This document shows, one piece after another, positions 9,401-35,702 of a DNA stretch of 64,000 bases. Numbering within the stretch: position 1 is the stretch's first letter; every line of letters starts with the position of its first letter. The stretch is taken from assembly GCA_053919585.1 (NCBI GenBank), contig CM132819.1. The stretch is one strand, 5' to 3'. The position numbers were made by a program, and so were the translations under genes. The stretch is from Euprymna scolopes (Eukaryota). A model generated the notes under the pieces. That model was not told the origin of the DNA. It was given only the letters and a program-made list of their open reading frames with translations, and ran no database searches.

Positions 9401-12400
9401 GTAACATAGATATTTGTCGGATAGATATTTGTAACATAGATATTTGTAATTTAGATATTTGTAACATAGATATTTGTAATGTAGATATTTGTAACATAGA
9501 TATTTGTAATTTAGATATTTGTAACATAGATATTTTCACATAGATATTTGCAACATAGATATGTGTCACATAGATATTTGTAATTTAGATATTTGTCACA
9601 TAGATATTTGTAATTTAGATATTTGTCCCATAGATATTTGTAATATTGATATTTGTCACATAGATATTTGTAACATAGATATTAATCACAATGCTATTTG
9701 TAATTTAGATATTTGTCACATAGATATTTGTAACATAGATATTTGTCACATATATATTTGTTACATAGATATTTTTATTTAGATATTTGTCACATAGATA
9801 TTTGTAATTTAGATGTTTGTCACATAGATATTGGTAATTTAGATATTTTTCACGTAGATATTTGTAATTTAGATATTTGTCACATAGATATTTGTAATTT
9901 AGATATTTGTCACATAGATATGTGTAATTTAGATATTTTTCACATAGATATTTGTAATTTAGATATTTGTCACATAGATATTCGTAACATAGATATTTGT
10001 CACATAGATATTTGTAACAAAGATATTTGTAACATAGATATTTGTAATTTAGATATTTGTCACATAGATGAGTGTAACATAGATATTTGTCACATATATA
10101 TTTGTAACATAGATATTTGTCACATAGATATTTGTAACATAGATATTTGTAACATAGATATTTGTCACATAGATATTTGTAATTTTGATATTTGTCACAT
10201 ATATGTGTGTAACATAGATATTTGTCACATAGATATTTGTAATTTAGATATTTGTCACATAGATATTTGTAATTTAGATATTTTTCACATAGATATTTGT
10301 AATTTAGATATTTTTCAGATAGATATTTGTAATTTAGATATTTGTCAGATAGATATATGTAATTTAGATATTTGTAACATAGATATTTTTAATTTAGATA
10401 TTTGTAACATAGATATTTGTAATTTAGATATTTGTAACATAGATATTTGTCACATAAAAATTTGTAATTTAGATATTTGTAATTTAGATATTTGTAACAT
10501 AGATATTTGTAATTTAGATATTTGTCACATAGATATTTGTCACATAGATATTTGTAACATAGATATTTGTCACATAGATATTTGTAATTTAGATATTTGT
10601 AACATAGATATTTGTAACATAGATATTTGTAACATAGATATTTGTCACATAGATATTTGTTATTTAGATATTTGTCACATAGATATTTGCAATTTAGATA
10701 TTTGTAACATATATATTTTTCACATAGATATTTGTAACATAGATATTTGTCACATAGATATTTGCAATTTAGATATTTGTCACATTGATATTTTTAATTT
10801 AGATATTTTTCACATGGATATTTGTAATTTAGATATTTGTCACATAGATATTTGTAATTTAGATATTTGTCACATAGATATTGGTAACATAGATATTTAT
10901 AACATAGACATTTGTCCCATAGATATTTGTAACATAGATATTTGTCACATAGATATTTGTAATTTGGATATTTGTCACATAGATATTTGTAAATAGATAT
11001 TTGTAACATAGATATTTGTCACATAGATATTTGTAATTTAGGTATTTGTCAAATAGATATTTGTAATTTAGATATTTGTCACATAGGTATTTGTAATTTA
11101 GATATTTTTCACATAGATATTTGTAATTTAGATATTTTTCACATAGATATTTGCAATTTAGATATTTGTAATTTAGATATTTGTCACATAGATATTTTAA
11201 TTTAAATATTTGTCACATAGATATTTGTAACATAGATATTTGTAACATAGATATTTGTAACATTAATATTTGTAATTTAGATATTTGTCACACGGATATT
11301 TGTAATTTAGATATTTTTACATACACATTTGTAATGTAGATATTTGTAATTTAGATATTTGTAATTTAGATATTTGTAACATAGATATATGTCACATAGA
11401 TATTTGTAATTTAGATATTTGTCACATAGATATTTGTCACATAGATATTTGTAACATAGATATTTGTAACATAGATATTTGTAACATAGATATTTGTAAT
11501 TTAGATGTTTGTCACATAGATATTTATAATTTAGATATTTGTCACATAGATATTTGTAACAGATATTTTCCCATAGATATTTGTAATTTAGATATTTGTC
11601 ACATAGATATTTGTAACATAGATATTTGTAAGATAGATATTTGTAACATAGATATTTGTCACATAGATATTTGTAATTTAGATATTTGTGACATAGATAT
11701 TTTTAATTTAGATATTTGTAACATAGATATTAATAATTTAGATTTTTGTAACATAGATATTTGTAATTTAGATATTTTTCACAAAGATAATTGTAATTTA
11801 GATATTTTTCACATAGATATTTGTAATTTAGATATTTTTCACATAGATATTTGTAATGTAGATATTTGTCACATAGATATTTGTAATTTAGATATTTGTA
11901 ACATAGATATTTGTAATTTAGATATTTGTAACATAGATATTTGTCTCATAGATATTTTTAATTTAGATATTTGTAATTTAGATATTTGTAACATAGATAT
12001 TTGTAATTTAGATATTTGTAATTTAGATATTTGTAACATAGATATTTGTCGGATAGATATTTGTAACATAGATATTTGTAATTTAGATATTTGTAACATA
12101 GATATTTGTAATGTAGATATTTGTAACATAGATATTTGTAATTTAGATATTTGTAACATAGATATTTTCACATAGATATTTGCAACATAGATATGTGTCA
12201 CATAGATATTTGTAATTTAGATATTTGTCACATAGATATTTGTAATTTAGATATTTGTCCCATAGATATTTGTAATATTGATATTTGTCACATAGATATT
12301 TGTAACATAGATATTAATCACAATGCTATTTGTAATTTAGATATTTGTCACATAGATATTTGTAACATAGATATTTGTCACATATATATTTGTTACATAG

Positions 12401-15400
12401 ATATTTTTATTTAGATATTTGTCACATAGATATTTGTAATTTAGATGTTTGTCACATAGATATTGGTAATTTAGATATTTTTCACGTAGATATTTGTAAT
12501 TTAGATATTTGTCACATAGATATTTGTAATTTAGATATTTGTCACATAGATATGTGTAATTTAGATATTTTTCACATAGATATTTGTAATTTAGATATTT
12601 GTCACATAGATATTCGTAACATAGATATTTGTCACATAGATATTTGTAACAAAGATATTTGTAACATAGATATTTGTAATTTAGATATTTGTCACATAGA
12701 TGAGTGTAACATAGATATTTGTCACATATATATTTGTAACATAGATATTTGTCACATAGATATTTGTAACATAGATATTTGTAACATAGATATTTGTCAC
12801 ATAGATATTTGTAATTTTGATATTTGTCACATATATGTGTGTAACATAGATATTTGTCACATAGATATTTGTAATTTAGATATTTGTCACATAGATATTT
12901 GTAATTTAGATATTTTTCACATAGATATTTGTAATTTAGATATTTTTCAGATAGATATTTGTAATTTAGATATTTGTCAGATAGATATATGTAATTTAGA
13001 TATTTGTAACATAGATATTTTTAATTTAGATATTTGTAACATAGATATTTGTAATTTAGATATTTGTAACATAGATATTTGTCACATAAAAATTTGTAAT
13101 TTAGATATTTGTAATTTAGATATTTGTAACATAGATATTTGTAATTTAGATATTTGTCACATAGATATTTGTCACATAGATATTTGTAACATAGATATTT
13201 GTCACATAGATATTTGTAATTTAGATATTTGTAACATAGATATTTGTAACATAGATATTTGTAACATAGATATTTGTCACATAGATATTTGTTATTTAGA
13301 TATTTGTCACATAGATATTTGCAATTTAGATATTTGTAACATATATATTTTTCACATAGATATTTGTAACATAGATATTTGTCACATAGATATTTGCAAT
13401 TTAGATATTTGTCACATTGATATTTTTAATTTAGATATTTTTCACATGGATATTTGTAATTTAGATATTTGTCACATAGATATTTGTAATTTAGATATTT
13501 GTCACATAGATATTGGTAACATAGATATTTATAACATAGACATTTGTCCCATAGATATTTGTAACATAGATATTTGTCACATAGATATTTGTAATTTGGA
13601 TATTTGTCACATAGATATTTGTAAATAGATATTTGTAACATAGATATTTGTCACATAGATATTTGTAATTTAGGTATTTGTCAAATAGATATTTGTAATT
13701 TAGATATTTGTCACATAGGTATTTGTAATTTAGATATTTTTCACATAGATATTTGTAATTTAGATATTTTTCACATAGATATTTGCAATTTAGATATTTG
13801 TAATTTAGATATTTGTCACATAGATATTTTAATTTAAATATTTGTCACATAGATATTTGTAACATAGATATTTGTAACATAGATATTTGTAACATAGATA
13901 TTTGTAATTTAGATATTTGTCACACGGATATTTGTAATTTAGATATTTTTACATACACATTTGTACTGTAGATATTTGTAATTTAGATATTTGTAATTTA
14001 GATATTTGTAACATAGATATATGTCACATAGATATTTGTAATTTAGATATTTGTCACATAGATATTTGTCACATAGATATTTGTAACATAGATATTTGTA
14101 ACATAGATATTTGTAACATAGATATTTGTAATTTAGATGTTTGTCACATAGATATTTATAATTTAGATATTTGTCACATAGATATTTGTAACAGATATTT
14201 TCCCATAGATATTTGTAATTTAGATATTTGTCACATAGATATTTGTAACATAGATATTTGTAAGATAGATATTTGTAACATAGATATTTGTCACATAGAT
14301 ATTTGTAATTTAGATATTTGTGACATAGATATTTTTAATTTAGATATTTGTAACATAGATATTAATAATTTAGATTTTTGTAACATAGATATTTGTAATT
14401 TAGATATTTTTCACAAAGATAATTGTAATTTAGATATTTTTCACATAGATATTTGTAATTTAGATATTTTTCACATAGATATTTGTAATGTAGATATTTG
14501 TCACATAGATATTTGTAATTTAGATATTTGTAACATAGATATTTGTAATTTAGATATTTGTAACATAGATATTTGTCTCATAGATATTTTTAATTTAGAT
14601 ATTTGTAATTTAGATATTTGTAACATAGATATTTGTAATTTAGATATTTGTAATTTAGATATTTGTAACATAGATATTTGTCGGATAGATATTTGTAACA
14701 TAGATATTTGTAATTTAGATATTTGTAACATAGATATTTGTAATGTAGATATTTGTAACATAGATATTTGTAATTTAGATATTTGTAACATAGATATTTT
14801 CACATAGATATTTGCAACATAGATATGTGTCACATAGATATTTGTAATTTAGATATTTGTCACATAGATATTTGTAATTTAGATATTTGTCCCATAGATA
14901 TTTGTAATATTGATATTTGTCACATAGATATTTGTAACATAGATATTAATCACAATGCTATTTGTAATTTAGATATTTGTCACATAGATATTTGTAACAT
15001 AGATATTTGTCACATATATATTTGTTACATAGATATTTTTATTTAGATATTTGTCACATAGATATTTGTAATTTAGATGTTTGTCACATAGATATTGGTA
15101 ATTTAGATATTTTTCACGTAGATATTTGTAATTTAGATATTTGTCACATAGATATTTGTAATTTAGATATTTGTCACATAGATATGTGTAATTTAGATAT
15201 TTTTCACATAGATATTTGTAATTTAGATATTTGTCACATAGATATTCGTAACATAGATATTTGTCACATAGATATTTGTAACAAAGATATTTGTAACATA
15301 GATATTTGTAATTTAGATATTTGTCACATAGATGAGTGTAACATAGATATTTGTCACATATATATTTGTAACATAGATATTTGTCACATAGATATTTGTA

Positions 15401-18400
15401 ACATAGATATTTGTAACATAGATATTTGTCACATAGATATTTGTAATTTTGATATTTGTCACATATATGTGTGTAACATAGATATTTGTCACATAGATAT
15501 TTGTAATTTAGATATTTGTCACATAGATATTTGTAATTTAGATATTTTTCACATAGATATTTGTAATTTAGATATTTTTCAGATAGATATTTGTAATTTA
15601 GATATTTGTCAGATAGATATATGTAATTTAGATATTTGTAACATAGATATTTTTAATTTAGATATTTGTAACATAGATATTTGTAATTTAGATATTTGTA
15701 ACATAGATATTTGTCACATAAAAATTTGTAATTTAGATATTTGTAATTTAGATATTTGTAACATAGATATTTGTAATTTAGATATTTGTCACATAGATAT
15801 TTGTCACATAGATATTTGTAACATAGATATTTGTCACATAGATATTTGTAATTTAGATATTTGTAACATAGATATTTGTAACATAGATATTTGTAACATA
15901 GATATTTGTCACATAGATATTTGTTATTTAGATATTTGTCACATAGATATTTGCAATTTAGATATTTGTAACATATATATTTTTCACATAGATATTTGTA
16001 ACATAGATATTTGTCACATAGATATTTGCAATTTAGATATTTGTCACATTGATATTTTTAATTTAGATATTTTTCACATGGATATTTGTAATTTAGATAT
16101 TTGTCACATAGATATTTGTAATTTAGATATTTGTCACATAGATATTGGTAACATAGATATTTATAACATAGACATTTGTCCCATAGATATTTGTAACATA
16201 GATATTTGTCACATAGATATTTGTAATTTGGATATTTGTCACATAGATATTTGTAATTTAGATATTTGTCACATTGATATTTGTAACATAGATATTTTCA
16301 CATAGATATTTGTCATTTAGATATTTGTCACATAGATATTTTTAATTTAGATATTTGTAACATAGATATTTGTAATTAAGATATTTTTCACATAGATATT
16401 TGTAATTTAGATATTTGTCACATAGATATTTGTAATTTAGATATTTGTCACATAGATATTTGTAACATAGATATTTGTAACATAGATATTTGTAACATAG
16501 ATATTTTACACATAGAGATTTGTAATTTAGATATTTGTCACATAGATATTCGTAACATAGATATTTGTCACATAGATATTTGTAATTTAGATATTTGTCA
16601 CATAGATGTGTGTAACATAGATTTTTGTCACATAGATATTTGTAACTTAGATATTAATCACAATTATATTTGTAATTTACATATTTGTAACATAGATATT
16701 TGTAACATAGATATTTGTCACATAGATATTTGTAATTTAGATATTTGTCACATAGATGTGTGTAACATAGATATTTGTCACATAGATATTTGTAATTTTG
16801 ATATTTGTCACATAGATATTTGTAATTTAGATATTTGTAACATAGACATTTGTCACATAGATATTTGTAACATAGATATTTGTAATTTAGATATTTGATA
16901 GCATAGATATTTGTAATTTCGATATTAGTAACATAGATATTTGTCACATAGATATTTGTCACATAGATATTTGCAACATGGATATTTGTAATTTACATAT
17001 TTTTAATTTAGATATTTGTAACATAGATATTTGTAATTTAGATATTTGTAACATAGATACTTGTCACATAGATATTTGTAACATAGATATTTGTCACATA
17101 GATATTTGTAATTTAGATATTTGTCACATATATATTTGTAACATAGATATTTGTCACATAGATATTTGTAATTTAGATATTTGTCACATAGATATTTGTA
17201 ATTTAGATATTTGTAACAGATATTTTTCACACAGATATTTGAAACATAGATATTTGTCACATAGATATTTGCAATTTAGATATTTGTCACATTGATATTT
17301 GTAATTTAGATATTTTTCAAATGCATATTTGTAATTTAGATATTTTTCACATAGATATTTGTAATTTAGATATTGTCACATAGATATTTGTAATTTAGAT
17401 ATTTGTAACATAGACATTTGTCACATAGATATTTGTAAAATAGATATTTGTCACATAGATATTTGTAACATAGATATTTGTCACAAAGATATTTGTAACA
17501 TAGATATTTTTACATAGATATTTGTAATTTAGATATTTGTCACATAGATATTTGTACTTTAGATATTTGTAATTTAGATATTTGTAATTTAGATATTTTT
17601 CACATAGATATTTGTAATTTAGATATTTGTCACATAGATATTTGTAATTTAGATATTTTTCACATGGATATTTGTAACATAGATATTTGTCACATAGATA
17701 TTTGTAATTTAGATATTTTTCACATAGATATTTGTAATTTAGATATTTTTAACATAGATATTTGTTACATAGATAATTGTAATTAGATATTTGTAATTTA
17801 GATATTTGTAACATAGATATTTGTCACATAGATATTTGTAACATAGATATTTGTAATTTAGATATTTTTCACATAGATATTTGTCACATAGATATTTGTC
17901 ACATAGTTATTTGTCACATAGATATTTGTAACATAGATATTTGTCACATAGATATTTGTAATTTAGATATTTGTCACATAGATATTTGTAACATAGATAT
18001 TTGTAACATAGATATTTGTCACATAGATATTTGTAATTTAGGTATTTGTCACATAGATATTTGTAATTTAGATATTTGTCACATAGATATTTGTAATTTA
18101 GATATTTTTCACATGGATATTTGTAATTTAGATATTTTTCACATAGATATTTGCAATTTAGATATTTGTAATTTAGATATTTGTCACATATATATTTTAA
18201 TTTACCTGTTTGTAACATAGATATTTGTAACAGATATTTGTAATTTAGATATTTGTCACACAGATATTTGTAATTTAGATATTTTTACATACATATTTGT
18301 AATGTAGATATTTGTAATTTAGATATTTGTCACATAGATATTTGTAACATAGATATATGTCACATAGATATTTGTAATTTAGATATTTGTCACATAGATA

Positions 18401-21400
18401 TTTGTAACATAGATATTTGTAACATAGATATTTGTAACATAGATATTTGTCACATAGATATTTTTTATTTAGATATTTGTCACATAGATATTTTTAATTT
18501 AGATATTTGTAACATAGATATTTATAATTTAGATTTTTGTAACATAGATATTGGTAATTTAGATATTTTTCACAAAGATAATTGTAATTTAGATATTTTT
18601 TACATAGATATTTGTAATTTAGATATTTTTCACATAGATTTTTGTAATGTAGATATTTTTCACATAGATATTTGTAATTTAGATATTTGTAACAGAGATA
18701 TTTGTAATTTAGATATTTGTAACATAGATATTTGTCACATAGATATTTGTAATTTAGATATTTGTAATTTAGATATTTGTAACATAGATATTTGTAATTT
18801 AGATATTTGTAATTTAGATATTTGTGACATAGATATTTGTCAGATAGATATTTGTAACATAGATATTTGTAATTTAGATATTTGTAGCATAGATATTAGT
18901 AATTTCGATATTAGTAACATAGATATTCGTCACATAGATATTTGTCACATAGATATTTGCAACATGGATATTTGTAATTTACATATTTTTAATTTAGATA
19001 TTTGTAACATAGATATTTGTAATTTAGATATTTGTAACATAGATACTTGTCACATAGATATTTGTAACATAGATATTTGTCACATAGATATTTGTAATTT
19101 AGATATTTGTCACATATATATTTGTAACATAGATATTTGTCACATAGATATTTGTAATTTAGATATTTGTCACATAGATATTTGTAATTTAGATATTTGT
19201 AACAGATATTTTTCACATAGATATTTGAAACATAGATATTTGTCACATAGATATTTGCAATTTAGATATTTGTCACATTGATATTTGTAATTTAGATATT
19301 TTTCACATGCATATTTGTAATTTAGATATTTTTCACATAGATATTTGTAATTTAGATATTGTCACATAGATATTTGTAATTTAGATATTTGTAACATAGA
19401 CATTTGTCACATAGATATTTGTAAAATAGATATTTGTCACATAGATATTTGTAACATAGATATTTGTCACAAAGATATTTGTAACATAGATATTTTCACA
19501 TAGATATTTGTAATTTAGATATTTGTCACATAGATATTTGTACTTTAGATATTTGTAATTTAGATATTTGTAATTTAGATATTTTTCACATAGATATTTG
19601 TAATTTAGATATTTGTCACATAGATATTTGTAATTTAGATATTTTTCACATGGATATTTGTAACATAGATATTTGTCACATAGATATTTGTAATTTAGAT
19701 ATTTTTCACATAGATATTTGTAATTTAGATATTTTTAACATAGATATTTGTTACATAGATAATTGTAATTAGATATTTGTAATTTAGATATTTGTAACAT
19801 AGATATTTGTCACATAGATATTTGTAACATAGATATTTGTAATTTAGATATTTTTCACATAGATATTTGTCACATAGATATTTGTCACATAGTTATTTGT
19901 CACATAGATATTTGTAACATAGATATTTGTCACATAGATATTTGTAATTTAGATATTTGTCACATAGATATTTGTAACATAGATATTTGTAACATAGATA
20001 TTTGTCACATAGATATTTGTAATTTAGGTATTTGTCACATAGATATTTGTAATTTAGATATTTGTCACATAGATATTTGTAATTTAGATATTTTTCACAT
20101 GGATATTTGTAATTTAGATATTTTTCACATAGATATTTGCAATTTAGATATTTGTAATTTAGATATTTGTCACATAGATATTTTAATTTACCTATTTGTA
20201 ACATAGATATTTGTAACATAGATATTTGTAATTTAGATATTTGTCACACAGATATTTGTAATTTAGATATTTTTACATACATATTTGTAATGTAGATATT
20301 TGTAATTTAGATATTTGTAACATAGATATTTGTAACATAGATATATGTCACATAGATATTTGTAATTTAGATATTTGTCACATAGATATTTGTCACATAG
20401 ATATTTGTAACATAGATATTTGTAACATAGATATTTGTAACATAGATATTTGTAATTTAGATGTTTGTCACATATATATTTATAATTTAGATATTTGTCA
20501 CATAGATATTTGTAACACAGATATTTGTCACATAGATAGTTGTAATTTAGATATTTGTCACATAGATATTTGTAACATAGATATTTGTAACATAGATATT
20601 TGTAACATAGATATTTGTCACATAGATATTTGTAATTTAGATATTTGTCACATAGATATTTTTAATTTAGATATTTGTAACATAGATATTTATAATTTAG
20701 ATTTTTGTAACATAGATATTGGTAATTTAGATATTTTTCACAAAGATAATTGTAATTTAGATATTTTTTACATAGATATTTGTAATTTAGATATTTTTCA
20801 CATAGATTTTTGTAATGTAGAAATTTTTCACATAGATATTTGTAATTTAGATATTTGTAACAGAGATATTTGTAATTTAGATATTTGTAACATAGATATT
20901 TGTCACATAGATATTTGTAATTTAGATATTTGTAATTTAGATATTTGTAACATAGATATTTGTAATTTAGATATTTGTAATTTAGATATTTGTGACATAG
21001 ATATTTGTCAGATAGATATTTGTAACATAGATATTTGTAATTAAGATATTTGTAACATAGATATTTGTAAGGTAGATATTTGTAACATAGATATTTGTAA
21101 TTTAGATATTTGTAACATAGATATTTTCACATAGATATTTGTAACATAGATATGTGTCACATAGATATTTGTAATTTAGATATTTGTCACATAGATATTT
21201 GTAATTTAGATATTTGTCACATAGATATTTGTAATGTTGATATTTGTCACATAGATATTTGTAACATAGATATTAATCAAAATGCTATTTGTAATTTAGA
21301 TATTTGTCACATAGATATATGTAGCATAGATATTTGTAACATATATATTTGTTACATAGATATTTAATTTAGATATTTGTCACATAGATATTTGTAATTT

Positions 21401-23078
21401 AGATGTTTGTCACATAGGTATTGGTAATTTAGATATTTTTCACGTAGATATTTGTAATTTTGATATTTGTCACATAGATATTTGTAATTTAGATATTTTT
21501 CACATAGATATTTGTAATTTAGATATTTGTAACATAGATATTTGTAATTTAGATATTTGTCACATAAATATTTTAATTTAGATATTTTCACATAGATATT
21601 TGTTACATAGATATTTGTCACATAGACATTTGTAATTTAGATATTTTTCACATAGATGTTTGTAATTTAGATATTTGTCACATAGATATTTGTAATTTTG
21701 ATATTTGTCACATAGATATTTGTAATTTAGATATTTTTCACATAGATATTGGTAATTTAGATATTTGTCACATAGATATTTGTAATTTAGATATTTGTCA
21801 CATAGATATTTGTAATTTAGATATTTATAACATAGATATTTGTCACATAGATATTTGTAACTTAGATATTTGTCACATAGATATTTGTAATTTAGATATT
21901 TTTCACATAGATATTTGTAATTTAGATATTGTCACATAGATATTTGCAATTAAGAGATTTGTCACATAGATATTTGTAACATAGATATTTGTAACATAGA
22001 TATTTGTAATTTAGATATTTGTTATTTAGATATTTGTCAGATAGATATTTGTCAGATAGATATTTTTAATTTAGATATTTGTAACATAGATATTTGTAAT
22101 TTAGATATTTGTAACATAGATATTTGTAATGTAGATATTTGTAACATAGATATTTGTAGTTTAGATATTTGTAACATAGATATTTGTCACATAGATATTT
22201 GTAACATAGATATGTGTCACATAGATATTTGTAATTTAGATATTTGTCACATAGATATTTGTAATTTAGATATTTGTCACATAGATATTTGTAATTTAGA
22301 TATTTGTCACATAGATATTTGTAACATAGATATTAATCACAATGATATTTGTAATTTAGATATTTGTCACATAGATATTTGTAACATAGATATTAGTAAC
22401 ATATATATTTGTTACATAGATATTTTAATTTAGATATTTGTCACATAGATATTTGTAATTTAGATGTTTGTCACATAGATATTGGTAATTTAGATATTTT
22501 TCACGTAGATATTTGTAATTTAGATATTTGTCACATAGATATTTGTAATTTAGATATTTTTCACATAGATATTTGTAATTTAGATATTTGTCACATAGAT
22601 ATTTGTAATTTAGATATTTTTCACATAGATATTTGTTACATAGATATTGGTCACATAGATATTTGTAATTTAGATTTTTTTTCACATAGATGTTTGTAAT
22701 TTAGATATTTGTCACATAGATATTTGTAATTTTGATATTTGTCACATAGATATTTGTAATTTAGATATTTGTAAAATAGATATTTGTCACATAGATATTT
22801 GTAACATATATATTTGTCACATAGATATTTGTAATTTAGATATTTTTCACATAGATATTTGTAATTTAGATATTGTCACATAGATATTTTCAATTAAGAT
22901 ATTTGTCACATAGATATTTGTAACATAGATATTTGTAACATAGATATTTGTAATTTAGATATTTGTAACATAGATATTTGTCACATAGATATTTGTAACA
23001 TAGATATTAGTCACATAGATGTGCGTAATTTAGATATTTTTCACATAGATATTTGTAATTTAGATATTTTTCACATAG
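6445..23078. repeat. 15-bp tandem satellite array (~16.6 kb, ~1,100 monomers) with higher-order repeats
   Basis: Monomer TAGATATTTGT plus a variable tetramer (AATT, CACA or AACA; also TAGATATTTTTCACA). The rare variant cataaaaatttg recurs at 7821, 10453, 13085 and 15717 (period 2632). ORF-track duplicates are offset by 2632 (9743/12375/15007) and 1986 (16978/18964). Confidence 0.98.
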
Positions 23079-26753: not shown

Positions 26754-27364
26754 TATATAGCCAGCAAGCCAAACAGGCAGCTATATAAAGGCTGTCTTGG
26801 ATAGCACAACGATGTGAGTTTGTAGGAGCACAGGAATGCGACATACAAGGATACAGCGGCTATACCTACGTTTTTAATTTAAAAAATGAGCATAGGTTTT
26901 ACTATTGGTCACCTCATACTTATAGCAATGCCCTACTTTGTTTTTTTTTTATCTTTACATCCCATGAGAGATGTTTCTGATAAAGGAGGAATAATTTTGG
27001 GGTCGCCCTTTGGTCTGAGTATTTAGTACGTAAATATTTAGAATATTCTAATAATGTCCAGATATATTTAGCTATCTATTTATTTAATGGAACTTTATGT
27101 TGTATCTGTTGTATAAGGATCAGTGATTATATTACAAACAACTAATAATACGTGCATTGGATTTTCAGATGATGTATTCTAATGTACATTAAACACATGA
27201 CGGTATAACAGAAAGCGTGTTTAATATTTTATATTGAACATAAAAGAAAATAAAATCTAAATATTTTCATAATTTCGTTTTGTCGTAGATCCTCCATTAA
27301 CTGAACTAAATCTTAAAATAAATTTATATTTACAACTCTGGCAATTCATTATTGAGATGAGTAT

Positions 27365-27683
27365 TATTTATTAATTTATTTATTGCGGATTATTATTCTC
27401 ATCTTTCTTAGATGTTGTTTCATGACGTTTTGGCCAACTATTCCTCTGGCCATCGTCAGGTGGTAACCGCGACGGGATAGGAACCCCTAAATCTCAGCAA
27501 TTACTGTCATCCATATTTGTTGCCGTCTCGCTTACTTACTTGGCCAATAAACATGGTGAGACGACAGCAAATATGGATAGCAGTAATTGCTGAGGATGAA
27601 GTCAGGAGATTCAGAGTTCCTATTCCATCGCGGTTACCACCTGACGAAGGCCAGATAAATAGTTTGCTGAAACGTTGTGAAAC
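27365..27683. mobile_element. palindromic non-autonomous element with hammerhead-like cores (Penelope pLTR/retrozyme-like)
   Basis: Arms 27417-27531 and 27556-27683 are inverted copies. Each arm carries CTGACGA-ggccag...tggcc/ttgct-(G/A)AAACGTY (plus strand 27641-27676; minus strand from 27459 down to ~27424). Confidence 0.6.
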
Positions 27684-27716
27684 TGTTGCAATATTTTTGA
27701 CTCATAATGGGGTATA

Positions 27717-27756
27717 AATTTAATTGCCGAAGCCGCTAGGAGACACATCCCAATCA
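27717..27756 (-). repeat. internally deleted mini-copy of the 380-bp unit
   Basis: On the minus strand, the unit head (tgattgggatgtgtctcctagcggcttCGGC) is joined directly to the unit tail (CGGCaattaaa), which fits a deletion via CGGC microhomology. Confidence 0.6.
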
Positions 27757-27773
27757 GACGAAGTAATGGTGTA

Positions 27774-28135
27774 TATATTTAAATGCTGCCCACATCAGAA
27801 TTATGTGGCAGAAGGCCTGGAAGTGGGAACCTCACAGGCTCCCCTAAAGAAGGGGAACTCCTGCAATTTTAAAAATTGCCTGAATAACCCCGTCAGCATT
27901 CCCCGGTCGGGGCGCCTCAGGCAGCAAGCAATAAACTTGCCCCACCAGAAAGCCCAGTGGCAAGGCCTGGGAGGGATGACCTCCAAGGTATTACCCAGGC
28001 GGCGTACCTCAGTCCAACAGGTGATGGGCCGGTTCCCAGCCCCTCAACTGTTGGGCTGAGTGTCAACTGACGAATCCTTGACGTGTACTACCCTGTTTCA
28101 CTGCAGCCGAAGCCGCTAGGAGACATTCCCCATCA
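27774..28135 (-). mobile_element. ~380-bp GC-rich hairpin-rich unit, copy 1 (candidate Tx1-dependent SINE)
   Basis: Direct repeat of 34243-34612. Bounded by GACGAAGTAATGGNGTA at 27757-27773 and 28136-28152 (period 379). Its 3' motif ggccttctgccacat resembles the LINE 3' end. Confidence 0.65.
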
Positions 28136-28820
28136 GACGAAGTAATGGAGTAAATATTTATTTTCGTAAAATACATTAAAAAATATTTTAAGAAAAATTT
28201 GGCACAAGGCCGAAAATGGGGGAGGGGGAAGGGCGGTTTTCTCTGTCTAAAGCTAACTAATCTAACCTAACTAGTTCCTACATTCACTCTACTTTCACCA
28301 CAATACCACATCCATACTATACATCAATCAGCGTATACATCCTTCGTCATTCACCATAAGAACATCATACCATGATAAACTAATTAAAACCCATGAGAAA
28401 AAGGGGGGGGGTTCGGGATATAAAAATTTTATGATACAAGATAAAATGGAATATATACAATGTTAGTAACAAAAGTCCCCCCTGTTGCTGAACTGTGGCA
28501 GGTGCGCTGATTCGCCAGTCGAAAAGGTATGCGGATCCGACCGCTTTATTTTATCACCTCTTACGAAAACCCTAACCCGCATCTCTGGCGAATCAAGCGA
28601 TCTGTCACTCAAATTGGGAAAGGGGAATGGGGCTAAAAAAATTAAAAAAAAAAAAAAAAAAAAACGGGGCAAACTTAAAAAGGGCCTAATTATCTCTATC
28701 ACACACTAGTTAGGTCACAAGAGCCTAGAAAATGGTCCTAATCTTGCCTAAATCGTGACCTACTCTGAACTTTAAACGAGTCAGGGCTTACGTTCGTTTT
28801 TGTTACCCAAAATTCTTTTC

Positions 28821-31800
28821 CTAAGGGACATCCAAGAACAAGTCAAGACTTGCTTCTCTCACCTGACACACACGCGCAACTGACACCCACCTTTCAACAA
28901 AATCTGACGAAGAGAGTCTAACTCTCTCGGCCTTGATACGACTCTTCAAATGATAACGGGGGATTCGTATAAGGTCGAGGGGATCGAAGTCCTCAGATCC
29001 GTACACCACTCTCATACGTGTGTTCCAAATGACAAGTCTCATTACTGCTAGCAAGGTCAAACACAATTCTTTTCTAATCCTATCCGTTGTCGGAGCCTAA
29101 TTGCTACATACCAAAGTGAGCGACGATATGTTTAGTATGCGGACCATGAGACCTGTAACAAACTCAATCAGCGGCACCACGATGCGACAGTAGACGAAGG
29201 CGTGGCATAAAGTCGCGACATCATCGCCGCATCGTTTGCAAATAGGCGAAACCGCCAAGCCAGCTGAGTGAAGTCACTTACCGATCCAGAGAGCATCCCG
29301 AATTACCAGCCAGGTCAAGGATGCCTCGTCATTAGTGAGGCATCCCGACCCAGGCGCCCAAGGCCAGATTGAGCGAAGCGGTCCCTTCGTCAAAGGGAGC
29401 CCCTCGCCAATAACATCCCTTACGGATCCCCTCACTAGCACCCGATATAATGCCTTTCGGGACAACAGCAGAGCGTTGAAGAGGCTTTCCTTAACTCTTA
29501 AGAGGAACTTCAGCGCGCGCCGGCACTCGCGGTAGAAGGTGCATTCACCTCGGGGCAACCTGTGTGCCCCCCTTGGACTCGTGCCCCCCTCTAAAAGCCG
29601 GAAAGGCTTTCTTAGTGTCCTCCATTCAGAGGGCACCGTCTTTCCTCTCCTGTGTGCACATTGGATCTAGGTAGTAGACCCGTAATGTGTGGAGCCGAAT
29701 CTCCACGTTTGGCATACCTAGACCGCCTTCAGAAGGATGTAGGTAGCAGACATCGCGACAGATGATGGGGGCCTTTCCAAGCCATAAAAAATTGAAAAGA
29801 GCCCTGTGCAAATATAGCAGTGTATCTGACGGAATTGGAGGCACTGATAGACGATAAATGAAGATTGGATAGATGTGGGTATTACACACCTCCGCTCTCC
29901 CCTTTAACGAAAGGTTTCTACTGATCCACCGCGCAGCTGCGGATCGGACCGCTTTCAGAACCTCCGACCAATTTTTCTCCAGCTAGAGGTCAGGACCAAA
30001 CCAGACGCCGAGTATCTTGCAAGGCCCGTCGCTCCAACTAAAGGATCCCTGAAGGGACATACCCCTTCAGGCACCGATGCGCAAACCCGAAGACTTGTCG
30101 CAGTTAATTTTGGCCCCTGTTACCGTTTCATACAATCTTATTTCTATACCGACGACACTAATCTCAGCACTGCTCGTTACAAGCACAGTTACGTCGTCGG
30201 CATAGGCGGAGTACTTTATCTGGGTATCCGCACCTGGCAAAGTGATTCCGCGTAGGACCGGGTTCACCTTTAGCTTGCGCAAAAATGGCTCTATTGCGAG
30301 GACGTACAGCATGGGTGATAACGGGCACCCTTGACGAATTAAACGTGACAAATTGAAGGGTCTCGACCTTCTCACATTTACTTCTACTATCACCGTGGGG
30401 TAAGCATAGAGCAGATGAACCCACGAGCGAAATCGCGGGCCAAAACCGGCCGCCGACAAAACAGCACCCAAGTACCGATGGTCAACCCGATCGAAGGCTT
30501 TGGACTGATCTAAATTGATCAGCGCGGCCTCAGTGTCGACTTTTTCTATCATCAGGCATATCGTGTGCAAGTTATCCTGGATTTCCTGTCCTTCACGGCA
30601 CACGTTTGCTCGGGGCTAATAAGACGATCCAGGACAAGCTGCAGACGATTTGCGAGAATCTTGGCCAAAATCTTTAACTCCGCGTTAAGCATCGTTAAGG
30701 GCCAGAAATTACCTAACCCATTCCCACCATCTTTGCTTTTACGAACAAGTTTTATCACGCCCATGGTAAAGTACTTGGGGATTGAGCCGTTCCTAAACCA
30801 TGAGTTAAATAAAAAAATAAAACCGTCAGCAAAGGGACAAAGATGTGCGACAACATCAAATACACTTCGTAGGGCAGACCATCGATCCCCGGAGACCTAT
30901 TAAGGCCGACCCGCTTTAAGGCTTCAATGACTTAATCCTCCGTTATACCACCTTCGCACCTAGCCGCTTCGGTTGTCGAAAGACGAGAAAAGTCAGCCAA
31001 ATAGGTGACGAACTGTTCTAATGACAGACCGGGTTCCATGGAAAAAAAACTCCTGGAAATGAGATCTAAACGCCTCCAGCACACCCTGGTTTGTGATCAC
31101 GGTACGCCCGTCCGGCAATGTGACACGAGCGCAGTTCAGCGGCCATGTTTGTTACTTCCTGGGGCATTCTTTTTAACCTAGCCCTAATCGCTTAAGCTTG
31201 GTGCTCCTTTTCAGTAAGGGAGGCTAGCTGAGCCTTAATTAAATTAACGCTAGCACTATCCCCCTCTTCCACCGCCCGATCTAATCTAGATTCTAGCGTC
31301 GCTTTAGCTGACCTAGATTCTAGGTTGAGTCTTTAGCTAAAATTGGCAGAAAAAGACCTAATCTTTTCCTTAATTTTTACCCACCACCTATTCTCTATAA
31401 TTGCCCCCGTCAGTTCCCGCTGTATGGTTAGTAATAGCCCTTCCCGGAAGCCCTTCACATCGAATAACGACGTGTTGAGCTTCCAGTAACCGGCTAATCT
31501 AGGCTTAGGTCTATCTAAGTTTATTCGTACACGGACAAGTCTGTGATCCGAGTAAACTATGTTGTGGAAACTTGGCCAATTAAATACTCCTACATCGACT
31601 CGCCTAACTAAGAACCGGTCGATATAGCTCGAGAACTGTACAGGACCGGAGCCGCGTCTACCTGTCCAAGTCCACACTAAGTCACGGGGCTTTTCATTTC
31701 GGAATTTGTCGATAAGATCAAACTTATCCACAAATTCACGAAATAAAACAGCATCCCGATCTTTTAGTTCCCCTAGAAGGTAACCCAAATCGATCTAACT

Positions 31801-32240
31801 CGGGATTCAGGATCGCGTTCCAGTCTCCCGCTAAGATAACCGTTCGAGAAGTATACATGAACTGCTTGATTCGCCGAAAAAAGGCAGCCAGCTCAACGTG
31901 ACTATTGGGCGCTTACATCCCAATAAGACGTAATGCGCTACCCTTTATGGTAACATCCAAAACGCATAGTCTTCCCTCCGGATCCATGTAGCACGGGTCA
32001 CACGACACATCTAGAGACCTTTTAATTAGCCAGGAGACCCCTCTAGAGTGAGAATTAAAGTACGCTGAATAATCCTTAAAGGTGTTATACAGCGACCGTA
32101 AATGGTCACCAGGAATAAAATGGGTTTTCATGCACACAGCAAATATCCCCTCCAAGGTGCTGCAGGTCCAAACTCAAGTGCCATTTTCGCGAGTCGGCCC
32201 TTAGCCCTCGGACATTCACACTAGCAAGCTTTAGATCCAT
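28821..32240 (-). pseudogene. LINE ORF2: APE endonuclease, reverse transcriptase and C-terminal zinc finger (frameshifted)
   Basis: Starts MDLKLASVNVRGL. APE motifs LAGDWNA, SYIDRFL and SDHR, then YWKLNTSL. RT motifs WPLTMLNAELKILAKILANRL, LDQSKAFDRVDH, IRQGCPLSPMLY and YADDVT. Also HPSEGGLGMP and C-terminal CKRCGDDVATLCHAFVYC. Confidence 0.95.
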
Positions 32241-32255
32241 GATTGTACCTTAGGG

Positions 32256-34043
32256 TTAGGAACCAGAAACGGACATCGCGGTCGTAAGCGTGCCGACGGC
32301 TCTCGTGAGGGAATAGGTACCCATCTGACTGTCGATGAGTCCGTCACGAGAGATACCGCCAACATGCAAAGGATAGGTTAGTTTTGCTATCTTATACAGG
32401 GAAGGGTGCATTTTAACCGGGACCCTCCCAATGCAACATTTTTTTAGATATTTTATATCAGAATCCTTAAAAACAACTAGGGGAGGGGAAACATTAAAAG
32501 TCGTGTTTGCTTCTTCAAGCATTGACCACAAGTCCCTTGCTTCTTCCTTTTTCCTAATTACTGTAAGGACTCTGTTTGCCTTGGGAAAGTTTGTGGGTAA
32601 ATCAATAAGTTTCCAACCTACCTCCTTTAATTCGATCAGTTTGATCATGTCTACTCCTTTAAAGTGTTTATTATTATTTAAGGCTGAATTATTAATGATA
32701 GAAATGTCTTATCCAGGGAGGTAGAGGGTGTTTTTCTTGTCAAGGGAGGGGCTTTTCTCAATATCCATAGCAGTATGTATGTTGGAGGATGGTTTTTCAG
32801 GGGAGGCAGCGGGAGTAACCCAGGTGGAGGGAACAGGAGAAGATGGTTTACTGTTTTTTTTCATTGGACTGAGGGGAATAAATTTGGGAAGTTTTTTGGG
32901 GGAACAGGAGATGTGACAGGTGGGGACATTCTGACTGGCGAGCGAGTTTTTGATTTTGTGGGAGACTGTGTGTTAGGATTGGCAGGGAGTTTAGGGCTTT
33001 GTTTTGGGGGAGGGGGTTTGCAATTTGCAGGGGGAGGGAAAGGGACCGTTTGCTGTTGTTGGTCCTTGGGCATCAAGTTGTTTTTAAGTTGGACGATCTC
33101 AATATGCTTGGCTTTGCAGGGATCATTTTTTAGCATCGCCTCCTCTCTCATATATTCAAGACACAGACGGCCATGAGTTTTCTTACCGGTAGCGATTTGC
33201 CAGGGTTCTTCTTGAGTATTCTATCTGGGGTGTCATTATTAGTCTTTTCGTGGGGGAGGGGGTTGGATGGTTGAATTCTTAAATGCTGTCCTATTCTTGT
33301 TTTTGGGTTCGAAGGGAGTTTCTTAAGGGGGCACTCTGATGTGAGGTGACCAATCTTACCACAATTCCAGTAGGTTGGCCTCCTGCCTGCTACAATAATA
33401 GGGATTTTCTCCTCCCCTACTTCGAAGAAGAATGGTATATTTGTGAAGTTTTCTTTATCTAATAAGATATCGAATGACCAGATGCCGTGAAACTCATCTA
33501 CTTGGATGGATATTATTTCACCGAATTGGAGTAGAAATGCGCCTATATGTTCCCCTTCTATATAATGTGGAACGTGGAAAACGGAGGCAGTCGTTCTCCG
33601 TTACCCATATATTCAGTTCTAAGTACATAGTTTTGTGTAATGACTTCTTTTTGGGATAACATTAAATATTCCTCCGTAGAGTTGAACAAAGCACTCCCTG
33701 TGTTGTACCCCTTACATTTTATAATGTGTAGGGGTCTGACGCCAGTTTAAGCCAATAAATTTATGATGATATCTGCTGTAGCTCTTATTACTTTTTTGGA
33801 TTTCCGATCCACGATAAACAAGGTCAAGCATCTCTTTTGTATTTCTTGCAGTTTGGGCAGGTTTACGATTAGCCCTTTTCCTGTGACGTAATCCATGCTT
33901 TGTTTCGCTTTCTCTACAAAGTCTTTGACGTTAAGTTCTACGTTTAGTGGTTTAATCCAGCTTGCCGCAGAAGGTGTAGTATCTTCCGCCTCCATAGTAT
34001 CCACCACCACTGGCGTCTGGCTCGCGCAAGCGGCCATAGCCAA
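32256..34043 (-). pseudogene. LINE ORF1 (gag-like nucleic-acid-binding protein), disrupted
   Basis: Minus-strand fragments 33747-34043, 32861-33151 and 32256-32648. Zinc knuckle GRRPT(Y)WNCGKIGHLTSECP near 33330-33390 (first Cys mutated), followed by a Pro-rich low-complexity linker. The stop lies 16 nt before the ORF2 ATG. Confidence 0.85.
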
Positions 34044-34242
34044 ACCATTATAAAACGGTTAAAAAGTCCGGCAGAAACGTATAAAATGTCGGGAAAAAAT
34101 GTCACAGCAAGAAAAATAGGTAGCAACAATAACAACAAAAATGACAACAGAAATAACACGTAGAAAAGGGAAGAGAAACGCAATAATAATATTACCTTGC
34201 AAAACACCTGACGTATAATGAGAAGGACGAAGTAATGGGGTA

Positions 34243-34612
34243 GTTATTTAATTGCCGCCCGCATCGGCAATATTTGGCACAAGGCCTGGAAAGTGGGAAC
34301 CCCGCAGGCTCCCCTAAAGGAGGGGAACTCCTGCAATTTTAAAAATTGGCCGAGTAACTCCGTCGGCATTCCACGGGCAGGGCGCATCAGGCAGCAAGCA
34401 ATAAACTTGCCCCACGTGAAAGCCCGGTGGCAAGGCCTGGGAGGGTGGACCTCCTAGGTATTACCCAGGCGGTGTACCTCAGTCCAACAGGTGATGGGCC
34501 GGTTCCCGGCCCCTCACCTGTTGGGCTGAGTATCAAGTGACGAATCCTTGACTTGTAATACCCTGTCTCCCTGCAGCCGAAGAGGAGGACACATCCCATC
34601 CAAACAGTGTTT
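34243..34612 (-). mobile_element. ~370-bp GC-rich hairpin-rich unit, copy 2 (candidate Tx1-dependent SINE)
   Basis: Homologous to 27774-28135. Contains the near-perfect hairpin ctcagtccaacaggtgatgggccgg-ttc-ccggcccctcacctgttgggctgag. Its minus-strand 3' motif ggccttgtgccaaat is identical to the LINE 3' motif. Confidence 0.65.
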
Positions 34613-34904
34613 TAATGGGGTATACTCCCACACGATCGGACGATTCTATTTATAAACAATGCTGCTAGGAACTGATGAATCGAATTAATTCATGTTCTGC
34701 TACCAACCAATCGGAAACCAGAACTGCTCCATAAATATTAAACCTTTTTCTGTAGCAATTTCGGATGTTTTTTTCCGTGTCGACACGGTAAGAATCTTTT
34801 GCTCTGTGGAACTCTCTACTGCAAACCAGTCACCTCTCAAGACTTGTTTAGAACAACGAACCATCGGAAACTGTCCTGAAAGTAAACATGGCTTACACTC
34901 CTAG

Positions 34905-35001
34905 TAACCTCCTGACGAAGGCTAGAGAAATAGTTGGCTGAAACGTTGTGAAACAATATCTAACGATGAGAATAATAATCTGCAATAGATAAATTAATAA
35001 A
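34905..35001 (+). mobile_element. terminal arm of the hammerhead-like inverted-repeat family
   Basis: cctgacgaaggctagagaaatagttggctgaaacgttgtgaaacaatatctaacgatgagaataataatctgcaatagataaattaataaa is a close reverse-complement match to 27367-27460. Confidence 0.65.
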
Positions 35002-35702
35002 CTATGGTAATATGATTATGTAAAGAAAATACAAGAAACGAGTAAAAATATCGAAACACTTGAAAGGTTTAATCGATATGAGAATTTGGGTGAACGGTTA
35101 AACAGTTGTGTGATTGCCGAACTCCGGGAAACCGACTCTGGCCCACCACTAGAATATCGCTATAATTCGTCAATTTACAACTTTTTACCTCCCTGTTCTC
35201 CAATGTGATGGGCATTAACTGACCCAATTTGCACTATCATACATATGAGACTTCCAATTTGGTTTCCGGCACCGAATTGTAACATCGATAGTGATCACAT
35301 TAGATCGCACTAAACTCACAGGGTTACATTATTGAAAATAGACACGAATGGACAACAGTATTTTCTCTAAATGCAGATACATAAATAATTACAACTATAA
35401 ATAAATATTAATCAATATTTGCTATATTATTTTACTAAAATTAATAAGTATTTCTTCATAAACATTATAAAACAGAAAAACGGTAGTTACAAATACTAAG
35501 GTATACACTCGAAGTCGCTATCTGATTTGAAGCATAATTAATGATCGTCTGTATCTGTAATATTTGACATTGAAAACCATACAATATTCGGCATAAAAAA
35601 CCCTAATACAAAATCAGATAGAAAATATTATAACCCGAGAAAAGGGGCATATTCTGACTATATTTTAGAATTGAATCGTACGTAAAATAATCTTATACTA
35701 AT

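What the first reader, a model, noticed from the sequence alone, without database searches (positions are those of the whole stretch)
27705..34624. Head-to-tail array of a Tx1 LINE and SINE-like units with the same motif at every junction (candidate self-regenerating site-specific retro-array)
Seen: TAATGG(G/T/A)GTA occurs five times in this block, at 27705, 27764, 28143, 34233 and 34613, each at a module boundary. The modules are a mini-unit, a 380-bp unit, a 6.07-kb Tx1 LINE and a ~370-bp unit, all co-oriented. The three internal copies extend to GACGAAGTAATGGNGTA (17 bp), and the outer pair share TAATGGGGTATA (12 bp). Known: Tx1-group LINEs have sequence-specific APE endonucleases. Xenopus Tx1L inserts into a ~400-bp internal tandem repeat of Tx1D, and Keno, Mutsu and Dewa target U2, 5S and tRNA arrays. 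Inference: each insertion duplicates the target and recreates a landing pad, so autonomous and non-autonomous modules stack into a growing array. I do not recognise the target as any known RNA gene.
Basis: partly seen in the sequence, partly recalled or inferred. Interest (0 to 1): 0.82.

Follow-up and report, generated by a model that had tools for sequence, protein, structure and literature searches.

The report
LINE and SINEs stacked head-to-tail
A dead jumping gene (a Tx1-like LINE) and three copies of the short element that depends on it landed one after another in the same 12-base spot of a cephalopod genome; that spot looks like the elements' own tail end, so each landing re-creates it, which is a variant of a known behaviour of site-specific LINEs.

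Summary
TAATGGNGTA occurs five times in the window, only here, at every module boundary, and the 17-mer occurs three times (0 of 100 shuffles). All modules lie on the minus strand. The 6,079-bp LINE has APE, RT and zf-RVT domains and is broken by frameshifts and stops. Units A and B and a 48-nt deletion derivative share the LINE's 3' tail (GGCCTTGTGCCAAAT ... AAATATnTACnCC). The unit is a very abundant SINE: its depth is about 15-20 times the LINE's ORF2, and it also occurs in a second species.

The motif is the reverse complement of tail end TACnCC, plus ATTA, plus CTTCGTC at the inner joins. One 12-bp duplication (TATACCCCATTA) brackets the stack, and its first 8 nt equal the tail end. The upstream flank shows no element homology.

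Units A and B (85.8% identical) are no closer to each other than to a copy on an unrelated contig, so this is not a local tandem repeat. On that contig a LINE tail is again followed by a unit, with a different sandwich (TCAAAATC).

Best reading: repeated target-primed insertion at a tail-like site that regenerates itself. This is a variant of the known double-insertion and Tx1-Mar/SINEU stacks. The scan noted the same family elsewhere in this genome. Genome-wide flanks could not be sampled.

The parts
34613..34624 (-). Upstream copy of the 12-bp direct repeat (minus sense TATACCCCATTA). This is the target-site duplication that brackets the whole stack.
   Evidence: The flank upstream of it has no similarity to unit or LINE tails: local alignment scores of 14-17 against shuffled means of 15-18.
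34237..34612 (-). Unit A, a SINE-like element. An 11-nt variable leader (34602-34612) is followed by head, body and a tail ending in TACCCC at 34237. The tail box GGCCTTGTGCCAAAT is at 34273-34287.
   Evidence: Alignment A1. It is 85.8% identical to unit B and 86.1% to the L002 unit.
34226..34236 (-). Sandwich 1: ATTA plus CTTCGTC, between the tail of unit A and the 5' end of the LINE.
28147..34225 (-). Degraded Tx1-like LINE, 6,079 bp. Its layout is: 5' UTR 34038-34225; ORF1 remnants 33466-34037, with a weak zinc knuckle in 33151-33600; ORF2 remnants (APE, RT, zf-RVT region) 28824-32240; 3' UTR 28147-28823, with the tail box at 28197-28211 and the terminus TACTCC at 28147-28152.
   Evidence: Pfam RVT_1 matches 30070-30615 at E = 8e-20. 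tblastn with P0004, P0002 and the L002 ORFs shows frame switches. Stop-to-stop ORFs are all 182 aa or shorter. It is 82.6% identical over 6.3 kb to L002 LINE2.
28136..28146 (-). Sandwich 2: ATTA plus CTTCGTC, between the LINE tail and the head of unit B.
27768..28135 (-). Unit B, a SINE-like element. The head starts TGATGGGG at 28135 and the tail ends TACACC at 27768. The tail box is at 27803-27817.
   Evidence: Its RNA fold is -162.5 kcal/mol, z = -5.15. There is no Rfam family and no tRNA. Summed word depth is 246k-530k, against 15-37k for the LINE ORF2.
27757..27767 (-). Sandwich 3: ATTA plus CTTCGTC, between the tail of unit B and the head of the mini unit.
27709..27756 (-). Mini unit, an internal-deletion derivative of the unit. 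It is 31 nt of head (27726-27756) joined to 17 nt of tail (27709-27725) at a 4-nt GCCG microhomology.
   Evidence: (D3, D10).
27705..27716 (-). Downstream copy of the 12-bp direct repeat. It overlaps the last 8 nt of the mini unit's tail, followed by ATTA.
27343..27683 (.). Flank: a very abundant MITE-like foldback whose right arm stops at 27683. The rest of that arm, with a 51-bp overlap (27633-27683 = 34904-34954, 90%), resumes at 34904-35018.
   Evidence: (I1-I3, D7).

Best explanation
All sequences here are given in the elements' sense (minus strand).

[quoted passage not shown] The first-strand nick lies just 5' of a sequence identical to the last 6-8 nt of the elements' RNA (TA[T]ACCCC). 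The second-strand nick lies 12-19 nt downstream. Every insertion therefore ends in ...TACnCC followed by the duplicated ATTA(...), and both a genomic copy and a tail copy of the landing site survive.

Later insertions into a surviving copy put elements head to tail, separated by 'sandwiches' of duplicated target. The 7 nt CTTCGTC is most simply the leader of the first-arrived mini unit. It would have been copied twice when unit B and the LINE landed with a longer stagger.

Shown:
- the anatomy of the stack;
- the shared LINE/SINE tail;
- the single outer 12-bp duplication;
- that the copies are independent of each other;
- that tail-to-element joins recur at other loci.

Inferred:
- the order of the insertions;
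- the nick positions;
- whether recognition is by the endonuclease, by RNA-to-DNA annealing, or both.
For: - The motif counts are far above chance.
- The LINE and the units share the 3' tail in the same orientation (alignment A4).
- The outer 12-mer is duplicated exactly, and the upstream flank has no element homology.
- The three inner joins carry the same 11 nt after the tail.
- Units A and B are 85.8% identical. That is no more than either is to the unit on contig L002, at 88.8% and 86.1%.
- In L002 a LINE tail TACCCC is followed by TCAAAATC, a unit, TACCCC, TCAAAATC and then flank. This is an independent stack with a different sandwich. Its LINE1 and LINE2 are only 83.4% alike.
- A related LINE fills a 26-kb contig with four or more head-to-tail copies.
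- The unit is a highly abundant repeat and is also present in a second species.
- One contig from another locus shows CCCCATTA plus a 12-nt spacer in front of a unit head (loose end at 28126).
- ORF2 has APE, RT and zf-RVT domains, and a relative's model matches Xenopus Tx1 ORF2 best.
- Tx1-clade endonucleases are sequence-specific, and Tx1-Mar/SINEU elements stack in tandem 'sandwiching a TSD' (PMC4494074; PMC1950540).
- Double insertion leaves the target duplication in the tandem junction (10.1101/158386).
Against: - Only this locus, L002, one loose-end contig and an unchecked scan note bear on the target. I could not sample genome-wide flanks.
- ATTA could be a constant part of this subfamily's tail rather than target.
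- The LINE-to-LINE joins in L002 and in L001/L004 have no sandwich at all, which the model explains only by a blunt second cut.
- One outer duplication around four elements is also what a single chimeric event would give.
- The L002 sandwich shares only TACCCC with this site, so any specificity beyond the tail-like 6-8 nt is unproven.
Confidence: 0.55

Rival explanations
1. The stack formed in one event. During a single target-primed reverse transcription, the RT reached the 5' end of one RNA and jumped to the 3' end of another (mini, then unit B, then LINE, then unit A). This produced a chimeric head-to-tail cDNA enclosed in one 12-bp duplication.
For: Only one pair of duplications flanks all four elements. 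Tail-to-head joins without any sandwich exist in L002 and L001/L004. End-to-end template jumping is an established property of non-LTR RTs (my own knowledge of the R2 literature; not checked here).
Against: The three inner joins carry 11 extra nt (ATTA plus CTTCGTC) that are not part of the tail in L002. The jump model needs three different RNAs, including the LINE's, to begin with the same 7 nt, or to end with the same 11 nt. The L002 unit is bracketed by its own TCAAAATC pair next to a LINE tail, which is a classical separate insertion.
Confidence: 0.15
2. The stack was built at another locus and copied here as one long read-through transcript, by 5'/3' transduction. The inner 17-mers would be duplications made at the source locus, and only the outer 12-mer was made here.
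For: A single outer duplication brackets the stack. The inner sandwiches (11 nt) differ in length from the outer repeat.
Against: ATTA follows the tail at all five joins, inner and outer, which points to one and the same site. The model needs a 6.9-kb transcript that runs through three functional 3' ends. It still requires stacking at the source, so it moves the question rather than answering it.
Confidence: 0.1
3. There is no real site specificity. TACnCCATTA is simply the constant 3' end of the LINE and SINE. The elements pile up because the endonuclease likes short AT-rich sequence such as the tail region, in a genome crowded with these SINEs.
For: The motif overlaps the shared tail. The unit is extremely abundant. 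The L002 site shares only TACCCC with this one.
Against: The upstream outer 12-mer sits in DNA with no element homology yet matches 8 nt of the tail plus ATTA. All joins are exact at the tail end and all are co-oriented, in at least three independent loci.
Confidence: 0.12
4. The array arose at the DNA level. It is an ordinary tandem repeat of a ~380-bp unit (made by unequal crossing-over or replication slippage) that a LINE happened to hit once.
For: Two units and a partial unit lie in the same orientation within 7 kb.
Against: Units A and B are no closer to each other (85.8%) than to a copy on an unrelated contig. Tandem Repeats Finder reports no array here. The unit is a dispersed, hugely abundant repeat that shares the LINE's tail. 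The LINE sits exactly between a tail and a head, not inside a unit.
Confidence: 0.04

Closest known systems
Tx1-Mar LINEs and SINEU SINEs of crocodilians (Kojima 2015, PMC4494074)
   Same: These are Tx1-clade LINEs with partner SINEs that share a target. [quoted passage not shown]
   Different: There the target lies inside an unrelated DNA transposon (Mariner-N4_AMi), and the SINE heads derive from U1/U2. Here the site resembles the elements' own 3' terminus, flanks differ between loci, and the SINE head matches no known RNA family.
Double insertion of site-preferring TEs, e.g. the Drosophila R1 tandem array with a 33-nt rDNA duplication between copies (McGurk and Barbash, 10.1101/158386)
   Same: Head-to-tail tandems arise because the target duplication leaves a usable site, and the junction contains a copy of the target. 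Dimers can later expand by unequal exchange. This may explain the array of four or more LINE copies in L001/L004.
   Different: R1 targets a host rRNA gene and its arrays are homogeneous. Here autonomous and non-autonomous partners are mixed, and the copies are 83-89% alike.
Microsatellite-specific Tx1-clade LINEs Kibi and Koshi, which insert in (TC)n and (TTC)n (cited in PMC4494074)
   Same: The target is a short sequence rather than a gene. From my own knowledge, not checked here, the element's 3' end carries the same repeat, so insertion regenerates the target.
   Different: The landing sequence here is a non-repetitive 8-12-mer. It is not a microsatellite.
Xenopus Tx1L in Tx1D
   Same: The ORF2 architecture is APE, RT and a C-terminal zinc domain. 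Tx1 ORF2 (P14381) is the best Swiss-Prot structural match to a relative's model: E = 4e-66 and 23% identity, against 18-20% for L1 ORF2. The endonuclease is sequence-specific (PMC1950540).
   Different: Tx1L targets a repeat inside a DNA transposon. No partner SINE or self-tail landing is described for it in the papers I read.
U2-homing Tx1 LINEs with U2-headed SINEs, noted by this scan in the same genome (s1-279846, s1-280696, s1-295483)
   Same: The genome, the LINE group and the idea are the same: the short partner carries the landing pad, so elements pile into each other.
   Different: There the pad is a U2 snRNA piece at the SINE's 5' head. Here it is at the 3' tail, and no U2 or other Rfam family is detectable. 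I did not check those notes.

Membership tests
Tx1 clade (L1 group) non-LTR retrotransposon | ORF2 with an N-terminal APE-type endonuclease | tested here: met
   Exo_endo_phos is found in the relatives P0004 and P0017. Their APE parts align to window 32143-31129, and the L002 APE ORF aligns to 32240-31126 at 79-88%.
Tx1 clade (L1 group) non-LTR retrotransposon | RT domain followed by a C-terminal zinc-binding (zf-RVT / CCHC) region | tested here: met
   RVT_1 matches window 30070-30615 at E = 8e-20. zf-RVT is found in P0002, P0004, P0005 and P0017, and their C-terminal parts align to 29642-28830. The window copy itself is interrupted by stops.
Tx1 clade (L1 group) non-LTR retrotransposon | RT phylogeny places it with Tx1L, Keno, Kibi, Koshi and the like, rather than with L1 proper | tested here: inconclusive
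   No reference sequences were available for a tree. As a proxy, the AlphaFold model of P0004 (pLDDT 84) finds Xenopus Tx1 ORF2 first in Swiss-Prot (E = 3.9e-66, 23% identity), ahead of human, mouse and loris L1 ORF2 (E about 1e-60, 18-20%). Octopus repeat annotations list 'L1-Tx1' families.
Tx1 clade (L1 group) non-LTR retrotransposon | Insertion at a specific target sequence | tested here: inconclusive
   Four elements lie at one site, with a 12-bp duplication whose first 8 nt equal the tail. L002 has a second stack next to a LINE tail. One further contig shows CCCCATTA before a unit head. No genome-wide flank census was possible.
SINE (non-autonomous partner of a LINE) | Short, non-coding, and with a 3' tail shared with a partner LINE | tested here: met
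   The unit is about 370 nt. Its longest stop-to-stop ORF is 111 aa and has no relatives. It shares the tail box GGCCTTGTGCCAAAT and the terminus AAATATnTACnCC with the LINE.
SINE (non-autonomous partner of a LINE) | High copy number and dispersed, exceeding that of the LINE | tested here: met
   In DNA run X1 the summed word depth is 246k-530k over the unit, 15-37k over ORF2 and 0.4-1.1k over the LINE's 5' part. The same pattern holds in X3 and in the other species X7. Dispersal itself is inferred. Depth is not a copy number.
SINE (non-autonomous partner of a LINE) | 5' head derived from tRNA, 7SL, 5S or snRNA with an internal pol III promoter | tested here: not met
   There is no tRNA. No Rfam family matches the unit at E up to 10. 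By eye there are only weak A/B-box-like strings and a 15-of-16 match to part of 5S box C, which I do not count.
Tandem stack by repeated insertion at one target (double insertion) | A copy of the target duplication sits inside each tandem junction | tested here: met
   ATTA plus CTTCGTC occurs at three inner joins, and ATTA at all five. TCAAAATC occurs twice in L002. This is not met at the LINE-to-LINE joins of L002 and L001/L004.
Tandem stack by repeated insertion at one target (double insertion) | The stacked copies are independent, not duplicates of one another | tested here: met
   Unit A to unit B is 85.8%, against 88.8% and 86.1% to the L002 unit. L002 LINE1 to LINE2 is 83.4%.
Satellite / ordinary tandem repeat | Homogeneous head-to-tail units detectable as a tandem array | tested here: not met
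   Tandem Repeats Finder lists nothing in 27.7-34.6 kb. The units are separated by a LINE and are as diverged as unlinked copies.

The most novel reading that the evidence does not exclude
This LINE/SINE pair homes to its own non-repetitive 3' terminus (about TAYACCCCATTA). Every one of the very many SINE copies would then be a landing pad. The family would spread its own target through the genome and build mixed LINE/SINE 'retro-arrays', which can seed satellites and would help explain SINE clustering in cephalopod genomes.
Probability: 0.3. Interest if true: 0.6.

Novelty: new variant of a known kind. Interest (0 to 1): 0.42.

Why it matters
Site-specific LINEs are usually explained as parasites of multicopy host genes or of other transposons. 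A lineage whose landing site is the last 8-12 nt of its own, and its SINE's, RNA would make its target as it spreads.

That gives a simple route from dispersed retroelements to head-to-tail arrays and satellites. It also offers a compact, natural example of RNA-end/target matching, which bears on how target-primed reverse transcription chooses its sites. Finally, it pairs a very abundant, so far unclassified, strongly folded cephalopod SINE with its likely LINE.

The value is limited because stacking at a regenerated target is already known for the Tx1, R1 and P elements, and because the evidence here comes from few loci.

Tried and rejected
Searches that found nothing:
- Rfam on 27000-35500, and a permissive run on the unit alone. 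The only hits were chance-level, plus a foldback hairpin in the flank.
- ARAGORN: no tRNA.
- The unit's 111-aa pseudo-ORF against the protein collection, tried as a trick to fetch other unit copies: nothing.
- Conserved unit 29-30-mers in JGI metagenome contigs (two scans) and in IMG/VR: 0 hits.
- The bacterial promoter/terminator scan is irrelevant here.
- The Tx1L endonuclease paper PMC85248 is not held.

Look-ups that gave no usable DNA:
- P0004's TARA scaffold has an unrelated 3' region.

Ideas considered and rejected:
- The upstream 12-mer is the end of an older truncated copy. There is no similarity beyond the 12-mer.
- The motif is part of the flanking MITE arm. MAFFT aligns it in register, but the intervening 21 nt match at only 8 of 21, so I treat this as chance in AT-rich DNA.
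- The unit is U2-headed, like other SINEs the scan noted in this genome. No U2 signal was found.
- The units are local duplicates.

Limits:
- Only a few of the 6,647 loose ends were shown.
Full report
OBSERVATION. TAATGGNGTA occurs five times in the 64-kb window, at 27705, 27764, 28143, 34233 and 34613. All five are on the + strand and all lie in this block (expected 0.96; 1 of 100 shuffles reaches 5). The 17-mer GACGAAGTAATGGNGTA occurs at 27757, 28136 and 34226 (expected 0.03; 0 of 100 shuffles reach 3). The outer two copies extend to the 12-mer TAATGGGGTATA.

ANATOMY. Everything is sense on the minus strand.

- tblastn with full-length relatives places ORF2 from about 32240 down to 28824: APE at 32240-31126, RT at about 30946-29548, and the zinc-domain region down to 28824.
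- Pfam finds RVT_1 in 30070-30615 (E = 8e-20) and a weak zinc knuckle in the ORF1 region.
- The copy is dead. No stop-to-stop ORF exceeds 182 aa, and homology jumps between frames at least five times.

Read in element sense, the block runs as follows:

1. flank gtgggag
2. TATACCCCATTA
3. unit A, with an 11-nt leader and ending in TACCCC
4. ATTA-CTTCGTC
5. the LINE, 6,079 bp, ending in TACTCC
6. ATTA-CTTCGTC
7. unit B, ending in TACACC
8. ATTA-CTTCGTC
9. the mini unit, 31 nt of head fused to 17 nt of tail at a GCCG microhomology, ending in TATACCCC
10. ATTA
11. flank tgagtc

LINE/SINE PARTNERSHIP. The LINE and the units share the box GGCCTTGTGCCAAAT, a spacer and the terminus AAATATnTACnCC. The same holds in a related contig (alignment A4; A1).

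- Laying Logan contigs of two DNA runs, one RNA-labelled run and a run of a second species gives summed word depths of 246k-530k over the unit, 15-37k over ORF2 and 0.4-1.1k over the LINE's 5' part. The unit is thus a very abundant repeat, the LINE is mostly 5'-truncated, and both exist in another species. Most laid pieces are 80-95% alike, so the family is old.
- The unit folds strongly (z = -5.15).
- It matches no Rfam family and no tRNA. Its head is of unknown origin.

FAMILY. Relatives carry Exo_endo_phos, RVT_1 and zf-RVT. An AlphaFold model of the 1,145-aa relative P0004 (pLDDT 84) finds Xenopus Tx1 ORF2 as the best Swiss-Prot match (E = 3.9e-66, 23% identity). L1 ORF2 proteins come next (18-20%), and jockey, R1 and R2 fall far behind. 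Named protein hits are from cephalopods, and octopus repeat surveys list L1-Tx1 LINEs and many unclassified SINEs. 'Tx1-like' is reasonable but not proven by a tree.

RELATED LOCI. Two public contigs bear on the question.

Contig L002 (ENA ERZ26051807) holds LINE1, LINE2, a unit and flank.
- LINE2 is 82.6% identical to the window LINE over 6.3 kb, and its unit is 86-89% identical to units A and B.
- LINE2's tail TACCCC is followed by TCAAAATC, an 11-nt spacer, the unit, TACCCC, TCAAAATC and then unrelated flank.
- This is an independent case of a unit landing exactly at a LINE tail, with its own duplication.
- What follows TACCCC therefore differs between loci and is target-derived, whereas TACCCC itself is element-derived.
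- LINE1 joins LINE2 with no sandwich, and the two are only 83.4% alike.

Contig L001/L004 is a more distant LINE (73% aa identity in the RT). It fills a 26.3-kb contig with four or more head-to-tail copies and an identical join each time.

Two further pieces of evidence come from this genome. One contig from another locus shows CCCCATTA plus a 12-nt spacer in front of a unit head (loose end at 28126). An unchecked scan note reports another array of the same three kinds of module 'joined at ACCCCATTATA' (s1-268955).

NOT A LOCAL REPEAT. Units A and B are 85.8% identical, no closer than either is to the L002 unit. Tandem Repeats Finder sees no array here. The DNA upstream of the outer 12-mer has no similarity to any tail. 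The outer pair is therefore a genuine 12-bp target duplication in non-element DNA, and its first 8 nt equal the elements' terminus.

MECHANISM. The best fit is repeated target-primed reverse transcription at one site.

- The first-strand nick lies just 5' of the tail-like TA[T]ACCCC.
- The second-strand nick lies 12-19 nt downstream.
- Each insertion leaves both a genomic copy and a tail copy of the site.
- CTTCGTC is most simply the leader of the first-arrived mini unit, duplicated when unit B and then the LINE landed with a longer stagger. Unit A then landed with the 12-nt stagger.

The same end state follows whether later insertions used the genomic copy or a tail copy, so this locus cannot show that the tail itself is the pad. 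L002 suggests it can be.

RIVALS.
- One chimeric event by template jumping. This is favoured by the single outer duplication and by the sandwich-free LINE-to-LINE joins. It is disfavoured by the three identical 11-nt sandwiches.
- Retrotransposition of a read-through transcript from a stack built at another locus.
- Mere preference for AT-rich tails, without real specificity.
- DNA-level duplication, which is disfavoured.

COMPARISON AND NOVELTY.
- Tandem Tx1-Mar/SINEU insertions 'sandwiching a TSD' are described (PMC4494074).
- Double insertion that leaves the target in the junction, with later expansion, is described for R1 and other elements (10.1101/158386).
- Tx1L's endonuclease is sequence-specific (PMC1950540).
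- Two things differ here. The landing sequence is not a host gene, transposon or microsatellite but resembles the elements' own non-repetitive 3' end. The SINE has no recognisable head.
- This scan has already reported analogous self-carried landing pads (U2 heads) for other Tx1 lineages in the same genome, and apparently this same family at other places.
- I therefore rate it a new variant of a known kind, of moderate interest.

LIMITS.
- Genome-wide flanks could not be sampled.
- Depth from contigs is not a copy number.
- The RNA-labelled run does not show transcription.
- I built no consensus and no repaired frame.

Noticed in passing
window 6445-23078: A 16.6-kb satellite of a 15-bp unit, GTAACATAGATATTT. 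It has about 1,112 copies at 80% matches, a GC fraction of 0.20 and a strong GC skew of +0.3.
   Followed up: no
window 27343-27683, 34904-35018, 45694-45883, 46586-46862: A very abundant MITE-like foldback, with summed depth of 1.25 million in X1. Two overlapping pieces of one arm (the 51-bp repeat 27633-27683 / 34904-34954, 90% identical) bracket the stack together with about 300 bp of host DNA. The host piece may therefore itself have been inserted into the MITE, or be a mobile carrier of the landing site. The weak Rfam mir-549-like hit at 27494-27593 is this hairpin.
   Followed up: partly
window 54240-55142 (-): The RT of a different LINE, about 25% amino-acid identity to the relatives of the LINE studied here. 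The region 52-56 kb has a strong AT skew of -0.32 to -0.45.
   Followed up: no
L001 1-16180 and L004 1-18444 (one ENA contig, ERZ26052130 ctg11195c): The contig consists entirely of four or more head-to-tail copies of a related LINE with a period of about 7.55 kb. The copies are 85-96% alike and every join is identical (tail ...AATATCA directly followed by GCCAACCTCG...). One copy keeps an intact 1,153-aa ORF2, P0270.
   Followed up: partly
L002 8816-8835 and window 34602-34612: Variable 11-nt spacers sit between the sandwich and the unit head. In L002 the spacer ttgattttgtt contains the inverted copy of the sandwich CAAAATC. In unit A the spacer aaacactgttt is nearly palindromic. These may be footprints of 5'-end joining.
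   Followed up: no
window 27900-28010 (-): The unit contains CCGCCTGGGTAATACC, a 15-of-16 match by eye to the box C region of 5S rRNA. Rfam's 5S model gives no hit even at E = 10, so I treat this as chance.
   Followed up: partly
window 44738-45123: A 60-bp tandem repeat of 6.5 copies at 94% matches, next to a MITE copy.
   Followed up: no
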